From Mytilus edulis (Eukaryota): 64,000 nucleotides of DNA. The position numbers and the translations under genes were made by a program. Of this stretch, positions 8,601 to 29,103 are shown one piece after another. Under the pieces are notes generated by a model. That model made no database searches, was not told the origin of the DNA, and was given only the letters and a program-made list of their open reading frames with translations. Numbering within the stretch: position 1 is the first letter of the stretch; every line of letters begins with the position of its first letter. The stretch spans positions 104,594,001 through 104,658,000 of the forward strand of contig NC_092344.1 in NCBI RefSeq assembly GCF_963676685.1. Direction: 5' to 3'.

Positions 8601-11600
8601 CATATTTATCACATCTTTCAATAAGTCGATTAATCCAAAAATAAAGCATAACATATCATTGCCTTGTGTATTGTTGCTCATACACCGGCTTTTATTTTTA
8701 AAAAATATACTTGTACATTATATATATACACTACAGCCATAAGAAATGAAATAATCAACAAATATTACAATGTAAGCAGAGAGAAGAAATGACGACAGGA
8801 TGCTTTTTCTCAGCAACTTAATAAAAGCTATAATGGAAAATTTACAACAAAATACAGAAATGATGGAATTGTATTTACCATCTCTAGCAACATCTTTCAC
8901 GTGCAAGTTCATTCGACCAGCCATGTAACCCAGAAAAGAGAAAATCACAAATCCAGCAAAAATACAGGTCAATGTATCTCCTACACATACTATTATAGAA
9001 TCCCTGAAATAAATAATATTAAATGCATTTTAGGGGATTTCCTAATCTAAAATATAAAAAAAACATAAATTTATTTACATAAAGAAAAAAGTTTAACCCT
9101 GATATTTATATATATATATAAAATTATATATCTAACGAAAAAACATTTTCATATTATTAATTTATGTTATAAACAAAAATATTTTTATCAGTAGTCATTA
9201 AAGAGATGTATTTATAACAAACGATAAGGAATGTTAGTTTGCACTAGTTAATATCCGGGTATATATCATGTTTATAGATCGGTTACTAACCTAAAACGAA
9301 AATTACGTGTGCAAAATTTAGGCGATAGCAATACATCGGAATGACCTCAACCTCAAACCCAACCCGGCCAAACAAATTGGAAACATAAACAATCTACATT
9401 CCAATGATTATAAAGTTACTCTTACTTGAGTATGTTATTATGGAATCTGTTATAACTAGCCAATGTTACTAATCCACCTCCAGCAATAGACATAGAAAAG
9501 AATATCTGTACAGCTGCATCTTTCCATACCTGGAAATTATGTGCAATGGATGTCAATACCGTTATAGCAATGATATGCATACAACATTGCGTATGTATAT
9601 AGATATAGGAAGATGTGGCATGAGTGTTAATGAGCCAACTCTCCATCCAAGTCACAAATTATAAAAGTAAACCATTATAGGCCAAGGTACATCCTTCAAC
9701 ACGGAGCTTTGGCTCACACCGAACACGAAGCTATGAAGGACCCCAAAATATTCTACTGTAAAACCATTCTAACGAGAAAACCAACGGTCTAATCTATATA
9801 GATACTTCAATCTTAATTGACCAGGATTGAAAAATTTCCTACGCCAGGTCGGTGGTTCTCTCTGAGCACTCCGACTTCCTTCACTTATAAGACTGACCGC
9901 CACAAAAGAACCAATAGTGCTGAAAATGGCGTCAAACACCAATCAATCAAATCACCTTCCTACGTCAGGCCAAAATAAAAGGGATAACTAATTTTTTTTA
10001 TTTGTTAAATGCCTCCATATATTGAGATGCATCTAGAAGAAATATGACAAAAATGCATGGCTAACTTCAAGAGAAATTTTTCTTTACCACTTTATTATAT
10101 TTTCATTTTTTTTAATTGGTACATACATCATGTACATGCTATCAATCTCCTTATATATTATAATTGTATATGTAGTATAAATGCGACGATTTCAATTGAA
10201 AATAATGTCAGTTTCAAATTTAATAATATTACATGTATACAACAGACAAGTTGTGACACTTGCTTTGTTTAAATTAAATGTTTTGATTGTATATTTTCAG
10301 TTTAATATTCCTTGTTATCAACGATTGTTAGGACGAAACTTTTTTCAATCAAAGTTTCACTCCGACAATTTTGTTTGTTCAGCTTAGTTTGATTTTGGTG
10401 CTTTTAATTTAACATGACGATTTCCCTAAACTTTCGTCTCCACTGTATCAGATGAAGGTAATTCGGAATTTCCAGAAGCATGCTATTTGAGCACACTGAA
10501 ATGTGTACCATACGCATAAATGTTCTTCATCTGTATTTACGTACTTACATATATAAATAAAGAAATTTTACTATACGATGAATGTCTTGTAAATCTGGTA
10601 TCGCTTTTAGCTGTGCCATTTTCTCTTGTTTAAATGTCTGCATTAATCATAAAATATGACAAATGAAAAATTCATAACTCTTAAAATAATTATACCTGAG
10701 CGTCTAGAAGCCTATCGAAGTCTGGAACAATGAAATAATATATACCCTGACCTGCATTGTCGAGTGTTACACCACGAAAAAATAAAATAATCAACACAAC
10801 GAACGGGAATATAGCTGTGAAATATACAACCTGAAATAAAATGTTAAAAAAGAAATAACAAATGACTACGAAACATCCCTTTGATGCCCTCATTTACCAT
10901 TTACACTGAATAAGGGATCTATATTCGTAGAAGTCCATTGGTTGTCGTTTCATTATAGTTTATCGAAAGTAGCAGGATAGGTATTTAATTATATGATTAC
11001 AAAGAATAAGAAGTATTATAAAGTTCGCTTGCATTTTTAAAAAATACAAAAAAAAACTCTGAACGTTTAGGCTTGCCTTTTCGATATTTCAACATATTAT
11101 CAAATTTATATAATTATTGTTTAATAAATGTGCTTATCAAAAATCTAAATTTATACGTTTTCAGCCGTTTAACCTAGCTTTTCAGTTTAATACGACGTGT
11201 ACCTATTACAAATTTATACGTTTCCAGCCTTTTTCCTAACTTTTCAGTTGTTTAATACCTTAGAAAATTCATACCTTTCCTGTTGTTTTAATACCCTTCA
11301 TAAGGCACAAGAAGCATATTATCCACGCCAACATTAAACACATTACAAGCTGCCATTTTGGTTGTCCGAAGTCATCGATACCAGAGCTCATATTTATTGC
11401 TCGATTGCTGTAAATAAAAGTTTCTATACATTCAGAAATGTTTGCGTGTATATCTTATTGCTATTAAAAGTATGTATTTTATTTGTTTCTGTCGATTTGA
11501 ACGGTTTGTACTTCTGTTGACCATACCTGGGTACAGACCAATGTGTACTCTTCAGAGGAATCAGGGTTCATTACAGGTTAAAAGGAGGGATTTGCATTGC

Positions 11601-12067
11601 CTATACTATTTAGTTTGAATGTGTAGCCTATTATTTTGACCGTGTAATAGTCTTTTTCTTTTCGACTAATAATTTTGAACCCCATATTGGTTACTTTCTT
11701 TTTCACAAGGTGGTTCGAATCTGACCAACACTATATAAAGACGGTAATTTTGGTTAAGGGATAGAAATGCTGACTTGCAGTAGATTTCATAAAGAACCGA
11801 TTTTAAATAAGTATTGCAAGAGTTATATTACTCTCTATTAGCATGGTATATCGGTTCTGACGTTTCCATTATAACTTAACGTGGCTGCGTATTTATACAT
11901 CCCGCACAACCAAACGAACTTCCGCTGGCACGTGATGTGTGCTACTGCATGCCGGACAAGATCAAGATACAGATTACCATATATTTGCATCTTAGTCATC
12001 TCTTTGGAAGATCAAAAGTCTAACCAAATACAGATGGTTATATCAAAAATCAAGCACCAAATTAATA

Positions 12068-12134
<67 letters not shown>

Positions 12135-15100
12135 TGTTATTGAATAGATTTTTAATCTACATGCCATCTGAATACGTAATTATACTAACGTCCAGTACTC
12201 TTCAGCTGCTGATATCCTTTTATGTCCGGTAACTTCTGTAAACATGGTGTCATTCCATAATCCAAGGAACTGGTCCCCATTGTAACATGTTCCATTCAGA
12301 TACTTTGTTGTGGTACAGTCGATCAGAGGAAGTTTATCAGCACAAACTATAATAAAGAGGTCAAATTTACATGCACATGAAACACATTTAAAATTCTTGT
12401 TTAAATTTACTATACATTTTAATTGTTTTACATCGTATAATAAATCTAAGTTTCTATGAAAAATCGTTATCAAACATTCACGAAGATTGGCTTCTTGTGA
12501 TTTTTCTCATACCTTCTATCATATACTACAGAAAGGATAAGCAAAGATAATACATTTCGATTACAAAATAACCTTTTTGTTAAGGTCACGGAATGTAAAA
12601 AAAAATTTAATTCTAAAAGACTTGATTGCAACTAAAAAAATATAATTTTAAGAAATATGAAAGGAAGTATTGTAATAATGATTCAAGTATACTAGTATAT
12701 AGATTTTCATTTTCTAGAATAAGTATTTATACTTATATATTTTTCATTAAAATTATTAGATATATTGATATTTAAAATATCAAAACGTACTGAATATTCT
12801 AGTAATATGTAAAGGACATTTTGAATATGGTAAATAAGGGTTATAATTTAGTGTCGCCTTAGCATATGAGCCGCAGACGGAATACTTATGTGTTTTTTTC
12901 CCGATTTGCTGAGGAGAAATAGTGTCATTAGGTAAGAACTTACATTCAGTATTCCACTCTGGATTATTACAGTCAGCCCAGGGGAGATCACTCGTGAATG
13001 AAACAAACAAATAATAATACGACCAAGCTAAGATCATGTTGTAGTATAATGATGTAAAACCAGACACCAGTACCATGGCAATTCCAACACCTTTAAACAT
13101 AGGTGCGAACTTCCAGCATGTCATTGGTCCACTGCTACAAAACTGACCAAGAGACGCCTCCATAAAGAAAAGGGGAACACCGATTAATCCCATCATCAAG
13201 ACAAACGGAATAAGAAAGGCACCACCCCCGTTCCTGTAGCACAAGTAAGGAAAACGCCACACATTTCCAAGGCCGACAGCGTATCCAAGGAGTGAGAGAA
13301 GGAAATCAAATCGTCCTGACCAGTTTCCACGATCCTCGTTTTCATCTTTCCCGAATATTAGCTTTCTGCTGTCTGTTGTTTCCACTGTAACCCCAGTACC
13401 CTGTTGAAATATATCATTTATGTATTATATTATAATCGTCTAATAAGATGTGAAATCGTTCAGTTCAAAAAGTAATGAAAAAAGTACATACTAGAATATA
13501 GGAAAAGACATAACAAAAAATAAATTGCACGGGACTTGTTTTATACGAATGAAAAAAATAAGTGCTATTCATTTGTTATTTCGTCCATTGCGAACACGTC
13601 CATCTATATTTTTCTTAAACTTTTTATAAAATATTTGGTGTCATAAAATCAGGCTCTATTCTGATGTTCTGCTTTATTACACTCTAAAATCGCCCGTTGT
13701 TCTTTTAATTGATGCAGTAACGTCCAACACATTAGATGTGCTCATTTAATATAAAACAGCATGACAGTATTGTTCTATACACAGAAAATAATTTTTAGTC
13801 GTATTGCAAACTGCAAATGCATGATTGCATCAACGTAATCATCAAAAAGAGGCGCAATGATTTCATAAAACCATCAGAGGTACAAACTTACCGTGGAAGG
13901 TGTCCTGGAATATCCCTTTTTGTCATCGTAGATTCCAGGGTCCAGCGAGGTTTTTATTTCTTTGCCTTCTACAGAACTTTCCTCTGACTCATAATAGTCC
14001 CGTCTGGCCTAAGTAATTATAAAACTGAATTTAAAACATAACAAAACACATCAAGAGAAAAAAGAATAATTGAACATGTATAATATTTACTTGATATCAT
14101 TAAACCCGAGAGAAAGTGAAAAAAAACTTTCAGATTCATTTTATGCGAGTATCGATGTTTATTGGTTTGTCTCGTATGCTAAATGAACTGTCCGTATTGA
14201 CATTCATGGACATATTTCTGGAAGTTCAAACATATTGCATAAAGCAAGAACAAACGGACCAGAAACAAGTCAACCCTCCATATTGGTAAAAGTAACTTAC
14301 ATATTATTTGTACTTTTTGTATGGCCCTTACACGTTTATTTTACTCTTGGAAAGTGCTTTGAGGAATATCATCGCTAGTCGAGGGTTACGATCCATTCCA
14401 AGGAGACTTGCAATATACTTTATATAATATACACTCTATTCTTATAAGTTTTGAACTGCAGAACTCTTAAATCCAATTGCTCCATTATAACTAGTTTTGA
14501 ACCAGGAAGTTCTTAATCTATATTGAAATTATTGTCAAAACCTTATTTTCTAATGCATTCTTTAACAGATAGAATCTCTTGCAAACTCTAGAAAACGGTA
14601 TGTCAATTTATGACTGATTGGTTTTAATGGTTTATTATTCCATAACGCCTGTCAGCCTGAAACTGCTATATCACATAACAGTACAACTGACTGTAGAATA
14701 GAAATCTTAACATTGGACACTTTGTATATAACCATAGTTGTACATCTATGATATAACAAAGAAATACGTGTTTAATGTTCTAACAAATAATACTACGTTA
14801 TTAAAGAAAAATACACAATTCTTGTTTTAATAACTCATTAAGTCATGTTTTAGTTATTATGTGTTTAAAGGTTTTTCCGATGACAACCAGTGTATCCACT
14901 GATCCATGAAGATTGACATATTTAAGTCCATGTTTACAGTGCATGTAGTTTTCTTTAGTAAAGCATGTAATTGATATCAAAATAAATCAATGGAATATAC
15001 GAGTTATTATTATAGTTTTATTTTGGTTTCCAAATTCATAAATGCATTTTGAATTAACCCGAACATTTGGTTACTAATTTAACGATCATATGATAGCAAA

Positions 15101-17058: not shown

Positions 17059-17998
17059 TACACATTAATCGCCATTTAAAGTTTTTATAGCGAAGACATG
17101 TTGTGGATACATCTTCATTGCAACAAAGACTGCGAAATATATTTTAACGCAGTTTTGTCAAGTCTTTAGTTTCCAACGTAGTGATTTCTAGTGTCTGTGA
17201 CTTTGCTGTATCCAGTAATATCATTGTCTTGTGTTTTTTTTTTACATTAATGTATTATTGATATCATTATTTGTTTTCGATGAACCAATGCTGAACGTTA
17301 GACTGTGTTCTGTGAAGCCCGTCATGATTTACATCTATCCAAACATTAACAATGATAAACTTGATAAATCTTCCTTATTATTAATGCAATTTATTTCAAG
17401 ACGAACCAACTTCGAGGACGATTTTTATATATCTTGTAAAATAAATATTGATAAAAAAAATGCTTCCAATAAAATGTTCTTAAGTTTGTCACCCTTTTTT
17501 CACCATTGACCATAGCATAACAAAATATTAAAGTAGTCGCATATGTATATCCCATGGCATTCAGTTTCAGTGACAATTTAATTAAATATCATTTGAATGC
17601 CAAAGGGCTATACTAACAAAATACCATATGTTGAAGTGAAATAAATGTTAAAGATAATAGGATAAATTTTCCGATACATATATATATGCATACAAAAACA
17701 ATTTCAACATCCGCAGCTACAAGCTAATCAGTAAAACTGAAAATCAATATTTTTTTCGAAATTTTTAATGAAAAACTGAAAACTTTTTGTACATAAAACT
17801 ACACTAAAAATTGTTTCTTTTTCGGATAATAACAGTAAATAACATCTATGTACATCGTGTATCTATTAAACTATATGTTGTTCTTTTCGGGTTTTTTTTC
17901 TCGAATCTTCCATTTTCGATACTGACTGACACAGACAGGATTTTTGACACGAGCTCCCATATTTATTTACACAAACGCTGCAGAATGAACACATGTTT

Positions 17999-19515
17999 TC
18001 AATTGATATTTTTCTTGTTCAATCTATGACTTTGAATATGGTGCTTCTTCATTTTCATGTTCTTATGTTTCATTCTTCTTTTATGTTTATTACGCGTTCT
18101 CTTTTCCAGTCGTTGTTTTAACGTTTCGGTGCCTCTGTTCTTTTTCCTCTTCTGGGTTAATGCACCCGACTGGCGCGATAACTCTTGTTTCACGGTGTTC
18201 AAATTAACATTTCTATCCAAATGTCCATGCAATGCTTTAAAATGCCTTTTCTGTGTTCCTATAGGATAATTTACATATTTATTCCTATTTCTCTTAATTT
18301 TGTGAACGTTGGGTATTCGTTTTTCCCTTGCAGATCGTTTCAATCGATTGACCTGTGACAGTTCAATTGTATTCGGATCATGAAACCGTTTTACTCTTGA
18401 AAGATCCTTTTCATGTAATGCAAATTCAATCGATCTTTTAGAACGTTTCATTCTGGACAAGTTCGGTTCGTAATGAGAAACTGTCAAAGTTTTATATGGG
18501 GACCGTTTTAATCGTTTGACACGAGTGAGCCTGAATGAGTCCACCTCAAGATCTTTAAAACGTTTAGCTCTTGAGAGTTCAGGTAAAACTACTTCACTAG
18601 CTCTTTTTGTCCGTTTAACACGTGATAAACCAGGTTTTAATGATCGTTTTAAGCGCTTAATTCTCGACAATTCACGTTCATAGTGTTCATCTCTTTTCAT
18701 ACGCTTTACCCTGAGAAGCATTGCATCTGTATCCTTCAGCCTCTTAACCCTCCTTAAATCATTTTCAAGTTGGAGTTCTGAAGTTTTTTCTGCTTCTCTT
18801 TTGATGATTGTATGACTCTAAAACACATAGAAAATAAATATCAATTAAAGTAATAAAGAAACTCATTCAGTGACATGGCAAAGCTTAGATTTAGAAGACG
18901 TAACTAAAAAAAATCTATCCATTTAAAATACTATATGTTATCATAGCCAGTTCAACACATTGGTGTCGTAACATACGCTATAATATTAGTCAAACATAAC
19001 TGTCGTCTTGTTATTTTGTATGCATTGCTTGTTGTGACCAGAATGTCAAATTCTAATCAACTACTTTGATTTTGTTTAAACCTCCAGTGTGTTCCTCTTA
19101 TTGTTCTTATTTTTGCCTGTTTTTATTCCATTACTCCTTTTCTATCATTGAATAAAACCAATGTTAATTCTTTGTCAAAATGCAGTTTACAACAACCGAA
19201 CTGACATTTAAAAGACATATTACAACCTCTAAGTATGTCAAATGCACCTCATTTATGATACAGTTTAAACTTTAAAATCTGCATGCGTCCTATTTATTAT
19301 ATATTCAAAACTAACAAGATTTCTCTTTAAATGCAGCCAAAGGAAGTAACTTTTTCCTAACAAACATAGAAATAATAAAAACGGGGAAAATTTCCAATCC
19401 AATTACGCAGTATTCGATAAATTTACGTTTCAGAATAACGAAAATGTCTTACCCGTACTGTCTCTGTTAAAGTTGAAAAACAGAATACAAGAACTAGAAA
19501 CACGGGTACCACCAT
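17999..19515 (-). CDS. Secreted prohormone-like precursor with repeated L-x-R-x-KR peptides and a basic tail; 2 exons, ~293 aa
   Basis: Exon 1, 19515-19453, encodes MVVPVFLVLVFCFSTLTETVR (signal-peptide-like) and ends at a GTAAG donor. Exon 2, 18817-17999, joins in phase 0 and extends the 240-aa ORF upstream by SHTIIKREAEKTSELQLENDLRRVKRLKDTDA. Confidence 0.85.
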
Positions 19516-24640: not shown

Positions 24641-24825
24641 GTGTATTATATATACAAAGTAAATATAGGTAGTAGCATTACCGTATATATATATTATAAT
24701 TATTAACACATATTTCAAAGGTTATCCACATGTTCATGCTTCAACTATGTTTTGGGTGTACTCGATTCGGTTACAGTACGTCACGCCACCACGTGTAGTG
24801 TTGTGTTATTAACAAGAATATTAAC

Positions 24826-27800
24826 CACAGTGTAGATACTATTCTGTACGCTATCCGGAAGTCGCGATATTCGAAGCGAGAACTTTTTGGATCACATTTT
24901 AAATTTGATGGGTATACTGAATTAAACGGTAAGTTGATCATCTGTACATTGCTTAATGATTAATTCAGCCGACATCGATATTATCAAATGGTTTAGAATT
25001 AAATTCCGCACATTCAATATTCGTATCTTTGCCTTAATCAAGAGATTTCTAAGTGCATCACTAAGAAAAATCAGTCGGCGAACCTAAAAACAATCTTTTA
25101 CCCTCTTAGTGTTCAAATTAACGTAAAATCCAGACTTAATTAACACAAAATCTTTTATGGGGTTACTTTATATAAGATACGGACTTGAACATTGCATTAT
25201 ATGGGGGCACCAATCAGGTATTTCTAACACCTCCTAAAAACCAATCAGGTATTTTCAACACCTCCTAAACCAATCATTAAAGTTTTCTGAAATTGCTCCA
25301 TTTGTACTCGATTAATGCATTATGGACCTTCTATTTCTGTAAACTTACCAAAATTATATCACATGAATTAACCCCCTACGCAAAGCTGTCTTTATCCATT
25401 TTTTGTTATTTTAAAAGCGACAAGCTTGATTTATGGTATCATCAATTGGTCAACGGAGGACGGTGTAAATAATCTTTAAAAATGTAATAGCTATAAACAC
25501 TGTAACGATACACTATTACAAAGTCTACAAGCGAATCATGTATTACATTTTAGGCATTTGATTTTAAATAAGACTGATGGAACAAAAATACAATTATTTT
25601 GCCATCTAAAAAATTCATCAGAAATATATTTGTATTGTCTGATGAAAGTAATTACACGTTATAGTTCCCTGGATAGTTCATAATATCACATATACACGTA
25701 CAATGTATATACCTTCAAATTGCTGTTGTTTTTTCTTCAAAATCACGACTGGTCATACAGTCAAAAAATCTGAAATCGCTTCTAGAATACAGTCAGTTCT
25801 AGACTGATCGAACAGTAATTTATTTTGGGATCCTCAAGGAAAACATATTTTTTTATGGGAAATACGAATATTCTACTGAAATACGAAAAGAATATTGAAA
25901 CAGTATATATTTAACTGTAAACTGATGCAAATATTTGCAATAAAAGATTATTTGCTTTGTACTACGAGAGCAAAATTGTCCATCGATTTCACTTTTTTTC
26001 TACCAAGTTGATGTGATGCACACGTATATTTCTCTGCATGATGTCTCTATTAATGACTTGCTGTCATTCATACAAAAGCCGTTCGGTATTCATCACATTC
26101 GCACGAAACTTTATCCATTACCCCTTTCAAAACTTCATTCTCTGTTCAATTTATGTTTGGAATCCACTGTTACAAACCCTCATTCAAACCAATACAAACT
26201 TCAAGCTATAATTTCGGATATTGCAAGTCACAGACTTTTCAAGCCAGTTCGCATTGGAAAAGACGAAAAAGAGAAAAGATCTTTTCTAAATCTTTCCTTT
26301 GCCAACAAAGGTCTCGATGGCGTCAACCTAGGCAATATCCTTCATCATAAATTAGTTCAATCGAAAATACCTCCTTATTTCAAAGACCAGTCTGTACCAA
26401 TAATTTCTTATACCTATACCAAACCTATTGCAACTTAAATTTTCAATTACAAACGCGTTTTGCAGAATCTCGATATTGACGACTTCAAGTCTAAACTTCC
26501 TGATTGCACTTGTGCTAGTTCCCAATTCATATATAATCCTGCTGGCCACGTTATTACCGGTGACCTTAACATTGTTGATAACACTTCTCTAAGAAATGTG
26601 TTATCGAAAGGTCCGAAATATCGTGAGCCTAAATCCATCAATTGGAAATACAACTTTAAAATTTTGATGGACTCAGTCGAGGATTATGCAAGGCAATGGG
26701 CTAAACGTGAAAAGGAAGACGTAGACACTCTATCCGAATGGATTAAGGCAGTGAGGTCGTTAATACAAATCAGAATCAAGAAACTGAATGGGTCCATCAA
26801 TGCCCATGCTACGTCAATCTTTAAAGACCCAAATGTTGCTAAACACTTATCCGACCTCCATGATAAATATGTTGTTGTTCCCGCAGACAAAGCCCCAAAT
26901 AACATCGTTTTTGTCTGTAAAAGTCACTACATTAATTGCTTGATAAACGAATTAGGTATAGACAATTCACTTGGAAACTCAACATATACCCTCACGACAC
27001 TTACCAAAGAGGAAATCCTGGATAATCATAGGTCTGTTCTTTGTTCCTTTGGTATTTCAACCAAAGATGAAGAACTGGATCTTCCATCACTGTATTTGAT
27101 ACCTAAACTACATAAGTGTCCTTACAAACAACGGTATATTGCTGGGTCTTCCAAGTGCTCCACGAAACCTCTTTCTAAATTATTAACATCTATTTTATCA
27201 GCAATCAAAGACGGGCTTCAAAGTTATTGTGAAACTGCCTATTCTAGAGGTGGCGTGAATCAGATGTGGATTCTTAAAAATTCCAAAGATCTTTTAGAGT
27301 ACATATAATCTAACTCTCTTTCATCTTGTAACAGTATTAAAACATTTGACTTTTCTACTCTGTACACAAGTATTCCACATTCCAAACTAAAAGACAAATT
27401 GAAAGAGTTGGTATTACTTTGCTTCATAAAAAAGAATGGCCAACGTAGATACAAGTATCTTGTCTTAGGGAGGGATAAATCATACTTTGTAAAGAATCAC
27501 TCTGATTCAAACAAAAAATTCTCTGAAACCGATATTATCAAGATGCTTGATTTCTTGATTGACAACATATTTGTAACGTTCGGAGGACGTGTTTTTCAAC
27601 AAACTGTCGGCATCCCAAATGGGAACAAACTGTGCCCCTCTACTTGCCGACTTGTTTCTTTATTATTATGAGGCTGACTTCATGCAGGAACTTCTTAGGG
27701 AGAAAGATAAGAAGTTAGCTATATCCTTTAACTCTACTTTCCGCTATATAGATGACGTTCTTTCACTAAACAATTCAAAATTTGGTGACTATGTGGAACG

Positions 27801-28725
27801 CATCTATCCCATCGAATTGGAGATGAAGGATACTACAGATACAGTTAAGTCGGCTTCATATCTTGACTTACATCTAGAAATTGACAATGAGGGTCGGTTG
27901 AAAACAAAACTTTACGACAAAAGAGATGATTTCAGCTTTCCAATTGTGAACTTTCCATTTCTAAGTAGCAACATTCCAGCAGCACCTGCATACGGGGTAT
28001 ATATCTCCCAATTGATACGATATTCCCGTGCTTGCATTTCCTATCATGATTTTCTTGATAGAGGGTTACTGCTCACAAGGAAGCTATTAAACCAAGAGTT
28101 CCAAATGGTGAAGTTGAAATCATCCCTTCGTAAATTTTACGGACGCCATCACGAGTTGGTTGACCGTTATGGAATAACCGTTTCACAAATGATATCGGAT
28201 ATGTTCCTTACGTCGTAACTACAATCCCCTTCCCTTTCATGAATGTGACCTACCGAATTAGACTATTTACCGAATTTGTAATCACATAAGCAACACGACG
28301 GGTGCCACATGTGGAGCAGGATCTGCTTACCCTTCCGGAGCACCTGAGATCACCCCTGGTTTTTGGTGGGGTGCGTGTTGTTTACTCTTTAGTTTTCTAT
28401 GTTGTGTCATGTGTACTATTGTTTTTCTGTTTGTCTTTTTCATTTTTAGCCATGGCGTTATCAGTTTGTTTTAGATTTATGAGTTTGACTGTCCCTTTGG
28501 TATCTTTCGTCCCTCTTTTATACTCTAATGCATGTTTTTGTTACAGTTACTCATATTTATGATGCTATATATACCTTGAATATGTTCAAAGCACTTTGTA
28601 GATATAGGAGTAAACAAATGATGAGAAAAGTTACCGTAGGCAAAAACGTCCTGTTAGCCGGTTGGAAATCATCGCTTCGAAAATCGCGACTTCCGGATAG
28701 CGTACAGAATAGTATCTACACTGTG
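24826..28725. mobile_element. Non-autonomous DNA transposon with CACAGTG termini, 54-bp TIRs and a 5-bp TSD (Transib/RAG-like)
   Basis: 24826-24879 matches the reverse complement of 28672-28725 at 53/54. TTAAC lies directly outside both ends. Confidence 0.85.
26035..28520 (+). mobile_element. 5'-truncated Penelope-like retroelement (RT, no C-terminal endonuclease; Naiad-like), disabled
   Basis: ORF pieces 26013-26438, 26460-27308, 27399-27671 and 27589-28218 join into an RT with VPADKA, IPKLHK, TFDFSTLYT, GIP-MGTNCAPLLADL and RYIDD. Two stops (~26436, ~27306) and a +1 frameshift (~27617) disable it. A ~300-bp 3' tail follows. Confidence 0.9.
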
Positions 28726-29103
28726 TTAACATTTTATTCCAAATTGTTTAATGTGATTTCATTAGAGGAGATTGGCGTTGTTTGACCACAAAAATGCCCA
28801 TCAGGCTGTTAAATTAAATGTGTTATGTATCGCCAAAAATTCGCAAGGCTAATTGATTTAATTTTATTGAATTTTGATTCCAAGAAATTTTCTCTATGTA
28901 AATGAATGATTGATATTCAAATACAGATATTTGAGGATACATTAGTTATGACATTAGTTAATAACTTTTCACCTTCTGGTGATTTGAAAAGAAACCAAAC
29001 AATGATAACATCATTTATAAATAGTTTAAAATGATTTTGCTATAACAAGTTCAAAACTCATGATGTACGTCCATGAACACAGAATAAGTTGTGTGCAGTG
29101 ACT

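What the first reader, a model, noticed from the sequence alone, without database searches (positions are those of the whole stretch)
17999..19515. Secreted polyprotein releasing ~8 non-amidated L-x-R-x peptides
Seen: splicing adds a signal-peptide exon to what looks like an orphan basic ORF. Cutting at KR gives EAEKTSELQLENDLRRV, LKDTDAMLLRV, DEHYERELSRI, SLKPGLSRV, ASEVVLPELSRA, FKDLEVDSFRLTRV, SPYKTLTVSHYEPNLSRM and SIEFALHEKDLSRV, plus a degenerate FHDPNTIELSQV. N-termini vary, the LxRx C-terminus is fixed, and no amidating Gly is present. Known: this paracopy layout is typical of neuropeptide precursors. Every site is also a furin consensus (R-x-K-R) and is often doubled (KR-x-KR). Inference: a candidate peptide signalling system with an unknown receptor. 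I recall similarly named LXRX/PXRX peptides in molluscan surveys, so novelty needs checking.
Basis: partly seen in the sequence, partly recalled or inferred. Interest (0 to 1): 0.85.

Follow-up and report, generated by a model that had tools for sequence, protein, structure and literature searches.

The report
Mussel LXRX neuropeptide precursor gene
This is the blue-mussel copy of the LXRX neuropeptide precursor, a secreted protein cut into about nine short peptides ending Leu-x-Arg-x; the family was described in 2013, and a Mytilus transcript is in its founding alignment, so it is real but not new.

Summary
On the minus strand, a 63-base exon (19515-19453) encodes a hydrophobic leader. It is spliced GT-AG across a 635-base intron to an 819-base exon (18817-17999).

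The 293-aa product is identical to Mytilus edulis CAG2234788.1, labelled "unnamed protein product". It carries eight L-x-R-x-K-R sites, against 0.2 expected by chance, plus one degenerate copy. There is no amidating Gly and no Cys. The C-terminal tail is conserved and rich in His, Lys and Arg.

The novelty is not.
- **Known family:** this is the lophotrochozoan LXRX (LxRV) proneuropeptide family (Conzelmann 2013, De Oliveira 2019, Thiel 2021, Réalis-Doyelle 2021).
- **Mytilus already included:** the founding alignment contains Mytilus EST ES394341, which reads across the same exon junction.
- **Link to oyster:** profile searches connect the mussel protein to the oyster LXRX precursor (E about 1e-11). 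That precursor's LxRx-type peptide was detected by mass spectrometry in visceral ganglia.
- **Leu is conserved:**

No receptor or function is reported in the papers I could search. One speculative point remains: L-x-R-V-K-R equals the proSAAS PC1/3-inhibitory hexapeptide, and vertebrate PEN also ends LLRV.

The parts
19453..19515 (-). Coding exon 1: start codon plus a 21-residue leader. Residues 2-13 form the hydrophobic core of a signal peptide. The donor gt lies at 19452-19451.
   Evidence: Translation. The Kyte-Doolittle 11-residue maximum is 3.19 at residue 2, and no other segment exceeds 0.3. The leader is conserved in all full-length orthologs. No SignalP tool was available.
18818..19452 (-). 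Intron of 635 bases with canonical GT...AG ends and a pyrimidine-rich tract before the acceptor.
   Evidence: Sequence. The exon 1 frame hits a stop after 30 aa if unspliced. The spliced form is shown by P0015 on a 1108-base contig and by Mytilus EST ES394341.
18797..18817 (-). Start of exon 2: a short propeptide linker (residues 22-28) that ends in the first KR.
18335..18796 (-). Paracopy region, residues 29-182. It holds eight canonical copies and one degenerate copy ending L-x-R-[VIMA], each followed by KR, with six sites doubled as KR-x-KR.
   Evidence: Leu, Arg and KR are invariant or nearly so across seven mytilid proteins, while the peptide N-termini vary.
18701..18718 (-). Copy 2 cleavage site L-L-R-V-K-R (residues 55-60). 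It is letter-for-letter the proSAAS PC1/3-inhibitory hexapeptide.
   Evidence: Sequence. The proSAAS hexapeptide and the PEN C-terminus LLRV are given.
18002..18334 (-). Basic tail rich in Lys, Arg and His, residues 183-293, with many further dibasic sites. Conserved blocks are KRIPP-x-VHK, HFK-x-L-x-G, FKQR...R-x-R and the terminal KHH[IV]Q-x-HRLNKK.
   Evidence: Invariant columns. A comparable tail occurs in oyster, scallop, Platynereis and Phoronis LXRX. AlphaFold2 is confident only for a helix at residues 251-280.
17999..18001 (-). Stop codon TGA.
17962..17967 (-). AATAAA polyadenylation-type signal, about 32 bases after the stop.
   Evidence: Read directly from the sequence. Its use was not tested.

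Best explanation
This is the single-copy Mytilus edulis gene for the LXRX (LxRV) proneuropeptide, a family known from annelids, molluscs and phoronids.

**Likely mechanism.** The exon 1 leader directs the protein into the secretory pathway. Subtilisin-like proprotein convertases of the furin and PC1/3-PC2 type cut after each R-x-K-R, and again after the second K-R of the doubled sites. A carboxypeptidase E/D-type enzyme then trims the Lys-Arg. This releases about eight or nine non-amidated peptides of 9-18 residues. They share a C-terminus of Leu-x-Arg-[Val/Ile/Met/Ala], usually preceded by an acidic residue. The basic tail yields further fragments.

**Shown here:** the gene structure, the existence of a spliced product, the excess of the motif over chance, the conservation pattern, and family membership.

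**Taken from published work on the oyster ortholog:** ganglion-restricted expression and mass-spectrometric detection of a processed LxRx-type peptide.

**Inferred:** that the same processing and neuronal expression occur in Mytilus, and that the peptides signal through an as yet unidentified receptor.
For: - **Gene model:** translation of the two exons by reference equals the 293-aa NCBI M. edulis protein P0001 returned by the search.
- **Copy number:** there is one copy in the genome.
- **Orthologs:** they occur in M. galloprovincialis, M. trossulus and M. coruscus at 86-97% identity, and in more distant mytilids at 43-50%.
- **Oyster link, search:** a profile search finds P0061 and P0063 at E of 1.5e-11 and 8e-10. 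These carry the peptides that PMC8398477 lists for Cragi-LXRX: SLQTSEI, GEVSHASKHASNKLSNSENT and HGNLGKHRVM match exactly in P0061, and the LEKEIALHRM peptide matches over its last seven residues.
- **Oyster link, pairwise:** BLASTP of mussel against oyster gives E of 9e-13. hhalign of the mytilid profile against the oyster profile gives probability 97.5% and E of 7e-12.
- **Founding alignment:** Conzelmann 2013 Additional file 10 aligns Platynereis LXRX with Mytilus_ES394341, and the N-terminus of that EST reads across the same junction.
- **Shared layout:** the published Platynereis and Phoronis LXRX sequences have the same architecture.
[quoted passage not shown] The listed mass for LEKEIALHRM equals the calculated mass of the KR-trimmed peptide.
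- **Leu conservation:** P6 Leu is present at about 80% of RxKR sites, both in 61 mytilid sites and in 123 non-mytilid sites.
- **No fold:** AlphaFold2 gives pTM 0.20, as expected for a precursor that is cut up.
Against:
- The signal peptide was judged only by hydrophobicity and conservation, not by a trained predictor.
- The conserved Arg, Lys-Arg and even the Leu all lie within a convertase recognition site. Their conservation could therefore reflect processing rather than receptor binding.
- The tail is at least as conserved as the peptides, and the neuropeptide model does not explain that.
- Platynereis expression is low at all larval stages (file 11).
- No receptor or bioactivity is reported in any of the five papers that mention LXRX.
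Confidence: 0.88

Rival explanations
1. The protein acts as a proSAAS-like regulator or high-affinity slow substrate of prohormone convertases. The repeated L-x-R-V-K-R units would be tandem copies of the motif that, in vertebrate proSAAS, binds and inhibits PC1/3. On this view the protein's main job is to buffer or time convertase activity in the secretory pathway, and the L-x-R-x peptides are the spent products, just as vertebrate PEN ends LLRV.
For: - Copy 2 is exactly LLRVKR.
- Ac-LLRVKR-NH2 is described as a proSAAS-derived PC1/3-specific inhibitor, and the hexapeptide also inhibits furin at sub-micromolar Ki.
- Human PEN ends ...GALLRV and is cut from ...LLRVKR-LE.
- P6 Leu, P4 Arg, P3 Val, P2 Lys and P1 Arg are the family's conserved positions.
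- One family member, P0067, scores above the Pfam ProSAAS cut-off (26.3 against 23 bits) over the profile's PEN-LEN region. Oyster LXRX hits the same region weakly, at E of 0.8.
Against: - The mussel protein and 15 family members give no ProSAAS hit, even at E up to 10.
- A scan of the mussel genome with PF07259 does not pick up this locus.
- The resemblance is confined to a 6-8 residue motif that is itself a cleavage site, so convergence is easy.
- proSAAS has one such site, not nine.
- In oyster the site is evidently cleaved and trimmed.
- No enzymology exists.
Confidence: 0.07
2. The functional product is the conserved basic, His-rich C-terminal tail, for example a cationic helical antimicrobial, metal-binding or matrix-binding peptide. 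The L-x-R-x region would then be an acidic-basic pro-region that neutralises the tail and is discarded.
For: - The tail carries the longest invariant blocks among mytilids, including the terminal KHH[IV]Q-x-HRLNKK.
- KHH[IV]-type motifs recur in oyster, scallop and Platynereis.
- It is the only segment AlphaFold2 predicts confidently, as a helix with pLDDT 78-91.
- Oyster tail fragments were detected by mass spectrometry.
Against: - The paracopy motif, including a Leu that cleavage does not need, is conserved across phyla, while the tail sequence is only loosely alignable outside bivalves.
- The tail is itself riddled with dibasic sites.
- Oyster expression is ganglion-restricted rather than in haemocytes or epithelium.
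Confidence: 0.04
3. It is an intracellular, highly charged nuclear or RNA-binding type protein, as automatic names of relatives suggest ('trichohyalin-like', 'RNA-binding protein 25-like', 'transcriptional regulator ATRX homolog'). The apparent leader would then be an annotation artefact.
For: The names that sources give to relatives. The composition is 31% Lys plus Arg.
Against: - The hydrophobic leader is present in every full-length ortholog from mussel to gastropod.
- It is joined to exon 2 in transcript-length contigs and in an EST.
- There is no Pfam domain.
- The automatic names come from low-complexity similarity.
- Oyster peptides were recovered as processed fragments.
Confidence: 0.01

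Closest known systems
LXRX (LxRV) proneuropeptide family: Platynereis dumerilii LXRX, Crassostrea gigas Cragi-LXRX (XP_011417984.2), Phoronis LXRX, Haliotis and Mytilus ESTs
   Same: It has a signal peptide and multiple non-amidated copies ending L-x-R-x, each before KR and often KR-x-[KR]R. An acidic residue precedes the Leu, there are no cysteines, and a long basic His-rich tail follows. Sequence similarity to the oyster member is significant, and a Mytilus EST of this same gene is in the founding alignment.
   Different: Nothing essential differs. The mussel has about nine copies against about five in oyster. Mussel spacers are mostly a single residue between two KR, whereas gastropods use acidic spacers. 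Copy 9 is decaying within the genus Mytilus. The M. edulis genome record itself is unnamed.
Vertebrate proSAAS (PCSK1N) and its peptide PEN
   Same: It is a secreted, cysteine-free neuroendocrine precursor cut at furin-type sites. It contains the hexapeptide LLRVKR, and trimming leaves a non-amidated peptide ending LLRV.
   Different: No profile-level homology was found for the mussel protein. proSAAS has a single inhibitory site, Pro/Ala-rich helices and no basic His-rich tail. Convertase inhibition by LXRX is untested. The PEN-GPR83 pairing is itself disputed.
PXRX family (De Oliveira et al. 2019)
   Same: Only the naming style, and its occurrence in conchiferan molluscs.
   Different: PXRX precursors have four conserved cysteines and a P[FM]R[WY] motif. 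The mussel protein has no Cys or Trp and no such motif.

Membership tests
LXRX (LxRV) proneuropeptide | N-terminal signal peptide | tested here: met
   The hydrophobic core spans residues 2-13 (Kyte-Doolittle 3.19), and there is no other hydrophobic segment. It is conserved in 13 full-length relatives. This is a hydropathy and conservation test only, because no SignalP tool was available.
LXRX (LxRV) proneuropeptide | Several paracopies ending L-x-R-x directly before a dibasic site, without an amidating Gly | tested here: met
   There are eight canonical copies plus one degenerate copy, against 0.2 expected by chance. P6 Leu is 80% and P4 Arg 100% across the family.
LXRX (LxRV) proneuropeptide | Sequence relatedness to published members | tested here: met
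   The oyster precursor was identified by its published MS peptides. It is found at E of 1.5e-11, BLASTP gives 9e-13, and hhalign gives 97.5%. Mytilus_ES394341 is in the founding alignment. The Platynereis and Phoronis sequences were compared by eye only, because they have no reference id.
LXRX (LxRV) proneuropeptide | Basic Lys/Arg/His-rich C-terminal region after the copies | tested here: met
   Residues 183-293. The same arrangement occurs in oyster, scallop, Platynereis and Phoronis.
LXRX (LxRV) proneuropeptide | Expression in nervous tissue and detection of processed peptides | not testable with these tools
   This is published for oyster visceral ganglia.
proSAAS (Pfam PF07259) | Match to the family profile above its curated cut-off | tested here: not met
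   There is no hit for the mussel protein at E up to 1, nor for 15 relatives at E up to 10. The own-genome scan does not pick up the locus. Only the distant member P0067 passes, at 26.3 bits.
proSAAS (Pfam PF07259) | LLRVKR-type convertase-inhibitory hexapeptide | tested here: met
   Residues 55-60 are LLRVKR, and seven more sites are L-x-R-x-K-R.
proSAAS (Pfam PF07259) | Inhibition of PC1/3 | not testable with these tools
   This needs an enzyme assay.
PXRX | Four conserved cysteines and a P[FM]R[WY] motif | tested here: not met
   The mature protein has no Cys and no Trp.

The most novel reading that the evidence does not exclude
LXRX precursors may be the invertebrate counterpart of vertebrate proSAAS, either homologous or convergent. 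On this reading they are tandem arrays of the L-x-R-V-K-R unit that binds PC1/3-type convertases tightly. They would act both as regulators of convertase activity and as the source of PEN-like peptides ending L-x-R-V.

The LXRX-like precursor in the hemichordate Ptychodera flava (P0047) would then mark a family of bilaterian rather than lophotrochozoan age. proSAAS currently has no recognised relative outside vertebrates in the papers I could search.
Probability: 0.08. Interest if true: 0.65.

Novelty: already known. Interest (0 to 1): 0.15.

Why it matters
As it stands, the finding allows a simple annotation fix. Mytilus edulis CAG2234788.1 and its orthologs (M. galloprovincialis VDI66382.1, M. 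coruscus CAC5425585.1, M. trossulus LOC134686818) can be named LXRX proneuropeptide.

The same applies to mis-named relatives: Gigantopelta 'trichohyalin-like', Saccostrea 'RNA-binding protein 25-like' and scallop LOC110456206.

The family is still an orphan, with no receptor and no bioactivity, so the mussel peptide list is useful input for receptor screens. The observation that the family motif coincides with the proSAAS inhibitory hexapeptide and the PEN C-terminus is cheap to test. If true, it would connect an orphan spiralian peptide family to a vertebrate neuroendocrine protein.

Tried and rejected
- **Pfam scan of exon 2 product:** nothing found.
- **RNA evidence:** I did not try to get around either.
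- **De Oliveira 2019 supplements:** searching for LXRX or mussel motifs gave nothing in the held files.
- **ESM Atlas look-alike search:** the best score was 0.79, below the useful range.
- **DNA-level tandem repeats in the gene:** none, so the copies are old.
- **More deuterostome relatives of the hemichordate hit:** none at E up to 0.1.
- **ProSAAS profile:** tested against 21 family members and the mussel genome. There was one pass and one weak hit, otherwise nothing, so homology is not supported.
- **AlphaFold2:** no globular fold, so I ran no fold search.
- **Complex prediction:** not used, because a convertase would be predicted to dock any RxKR peptide and the result would not discriminate.
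- **Joined exons:** Exon 2 was searched by reference, and the full-length protein used afterwards is the database record that this search returned.
- **Paper searches:** a search for 'LxRV' found nothing, and no paper on Mytilus LXRX turned up.

Full report
**What is there.**
- On the minus strand, 19515-19453 encodes a 21-residue leader with a 12-residue hydrophobic core. It is followed by gt.
- The next coding block starts at 18817, immediately after an ag that forms part of an in-frame TAG. The long open frame therefore cannot reach an upstream ATG without splicing.
- Exon 2 runs to a TGA at 18001-17999, and an AATAAA lies 32 bases further on.
A search with exon 2 by reference returned a 293-aa NCBI protein of Mytilus edulis, CAG2234788.1, 'unnamed protein product'. 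It is exactly leader plus exon 2.
- The genome holds one copy.

**Is the spliced form real?**
- Indirect evidence is nevertheless good. A protein differing by one residue, leader included, was called on a 1108-base public contig. The genomic ATG-to-stop span is 1517 bases and the intron carries stops, so that contig must be intron-less.
- The same holds for M. coruscus-type proteins on contigs of about 1110 bases.
- A Mytilus EST printed in a 2013 paper also reads across the junction.

**Is the motif more than chance?**
- The mature part has 8 matches to L.R.[KR]R, against 0.20 expected (maximum 4 in 20,000 shuffles). It has 15 R.[KR]R sites, against 1.9 expected.
None is followed by Gly.
- Across seven mytilid proteins down to 43% identity, the Leu, the Arg and the KR are invariant or nearly so. 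The peptide N-termini drift and one copy changes length.
- I anchored all RxKR sites and left out the second site of doubled pairs. P6 is Leu at 80% of 61 mytilid sites and at 79% of 123 sites in oyster, scallop, gastropod and other relatives. P3 is mostly Val, P5 mostly Ser, and P7 and P9 are often acidic.
That criterion is not met.

**What it is.**
- LXRX is a named lophotrochozoan proneuropeptide family. It was introduced for Platynereis (PMC3890597). It was later extended to other phyla (PMC6425005) and to phoronids, as 'LXRX (LxRV)' (PMC8557429). It was characterised in the Pacific oyster (PMC8398477).
- The printed Platynereis and Phoronis precursors have the same layout: a leader, then E-L-x-R-V-K-R-x-[KR]-R copies, then a long basic His-rich tail.
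- A profile of the mytilid proteins run against 1.8 billion representatives found scallop, gastropod and unnamed relatives.
- A second search with a broader alignment found two oyster proteins at E of 1.5e-11 and 8e-10. These contain the peptides that the oyster paper's supplement lists under Cragi-LXRX.
- Mussel against oyster gives BLASTP E of 9e-13. The profile-profile comparison gives probability 97.5% and E of 7e-12, covering the leader and the first copies.
- Additional file 10 of the 2013 paper aligns Platynereis LXRX with 'Mytilus_ES394341' and a Haliotis EST. The machine-read text is garbled, but the Mytilus row is recognisably this gene from its first residue on. So both the family and its Mytilus member are already in the literature.

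**How it most likely works.**
- It is a classical prohormone. The leader takes it into the secretory pathway, convertases cut after R-x-K-R, and a carboxypeptidase removes Lys-Arg. The result is non-amidated peptides ending L-x-R-[V/I/M/A].
- The doubled sites are two overlapping R-x-K-R sites that free a single spacer residue.
- The listed mass for LEKEIALHRM is exactly that of a peptide cut at dibasic sites on both sides with KR trimmed. The tail fragment HGNLGKHRVM was also seen.
- AlphaFold2 finds no fold (pTM 0.20). Only a basic helix at residues 251-280 is confident.
- Processing and neuronal expression in Mytilus are inferred, not shown. No receptor or bioactivity appears in the five papers that mention LXRX.

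**What the standard model leaves open.**
- The tail is as conserved as the copies. The blocks are KRIPP-x-VHK, HFK-x-L-x-G, and the terminal KHH[IV]Q-x-HRLNKK. KHH[IV]-type motifs are also present in oyster, scallop and Platynereis.
- All conserved positions of the copy (P6 Leu, P4 Arg, P3 Val, P2 Lys, P1 Arg) lie inside the convertase recognition window.
- They coincide with LLRVKR, the proSAAS-derived hexapeptide used as a PC1/3-specific inhibitor. That hexapeptide also inhibits furin.
- Mussel copy 2 is literally LLRVKR. Human PEN, cut from ...LLRVKR-LE..., ends LLRV.
- One distant family member passes the Pfam ProSAAS cut-off over the PEN-LEN part of the profile, and oyster LXRX touches the same part at E of 0.8.
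- Against that, the mussel protein and 15 relatives give no ProSAAS hit. A genome scan with the profile misses the locus.
- I therefore keep this as a motif-level resemblance and a low-probability novel reading, not a membership claim.

**Verdict.** Novelty is nil at the level of family and genus. Interest is low, apart from the annotation fix and the two leads recorded here: the proSAAS/PEN motif identity and a hemichordate look-alike.

Noticed in passing
P0047 (Ptychodera flava XP_070559151.1, named 'transcriptional regulator ATRX homolog'): This hemichordate protein has a clear signal peptide and seven L-x-R-x-K-R sites (nine RxKR-type sites in all), several doubled as KR-x-KR. It was found by the mytilid profile at E of 3e-5, and hhalign gives 94.9% over 31 columns matching the conserved first copy. 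LXRX is described as lophotrochozoan-specific. No further deuterostome relative was found at E up to 0.1, so convergence is not excluded.
   Followed up: partly
P0067 (unnamed ENA protein, 213 aa) and P0061 (oyster LXRX): P0067, an LXRX-like protein with A-L-S-R-M-K-R-L-D copies, scores 26.3 bits on Pfam ProSAAS (cut-off 23) over profile positions 194-252. Oyster LXRX hits positions 224-253 at E of 0.8. The family motif equals the proSAAS inhibitory hexapeptide and the PEN C-terminus.
   Followed up: partly
window 18335-18384 (minus strand; residues 166-182): Copy 9 is decaying within the genus Mytilus. Distant mytilids have ELSRVKRLKR. M. galloprovincialis and M. trossulus have ELSQVKRLKR, and M. 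coruscus has ELSEVKRLKR. The window's M. edulis has ELSQVNRLKR, which has lost both the P4 Arg and the first KR.
   Followed up: yes
P0002 (second M. edulis record, 155-kb contig) against window 18002-18334: A second M. edulis protein, 97% identical, differs from the window only in two short runs in the tail (..KIREIGIKY.. for ..KIKRNRNKY.., and ..EKERVIKHK.. for ..EKRTRNKHK..). These look like paired, compensating one-base indels in A-rich runs. They could be a haplotype variant or an assembly error.
   Followed up: no
window 18002-18049 (minus strand; last 16 residues): The extreme C-terminus, KKHHIQSHRLNKKNIN, is almost invariant among mytilids down to 43% overall identity. It is echoed by KRHHVQHHR in oysters and KKHHVQGH in scallop. 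The papers I read do not comment on it.
   Followed up: partly
Automatic names of relatives: LXRX orthologs are mis-named in public records: Gigantopelta aegis 'trichohyalin-like', Saccostrea echinata 'RNA-binding protein 25-like', and Mizuhopecten LOC110456206 'uncharacterized'.
   Followed up: no
window 8879-13260 and 24821-28730: Other first-stage notes on this window report an SLC6 transporter gene and a transposon with heptamer-like ends. I did not examine either.
   Followed up: no
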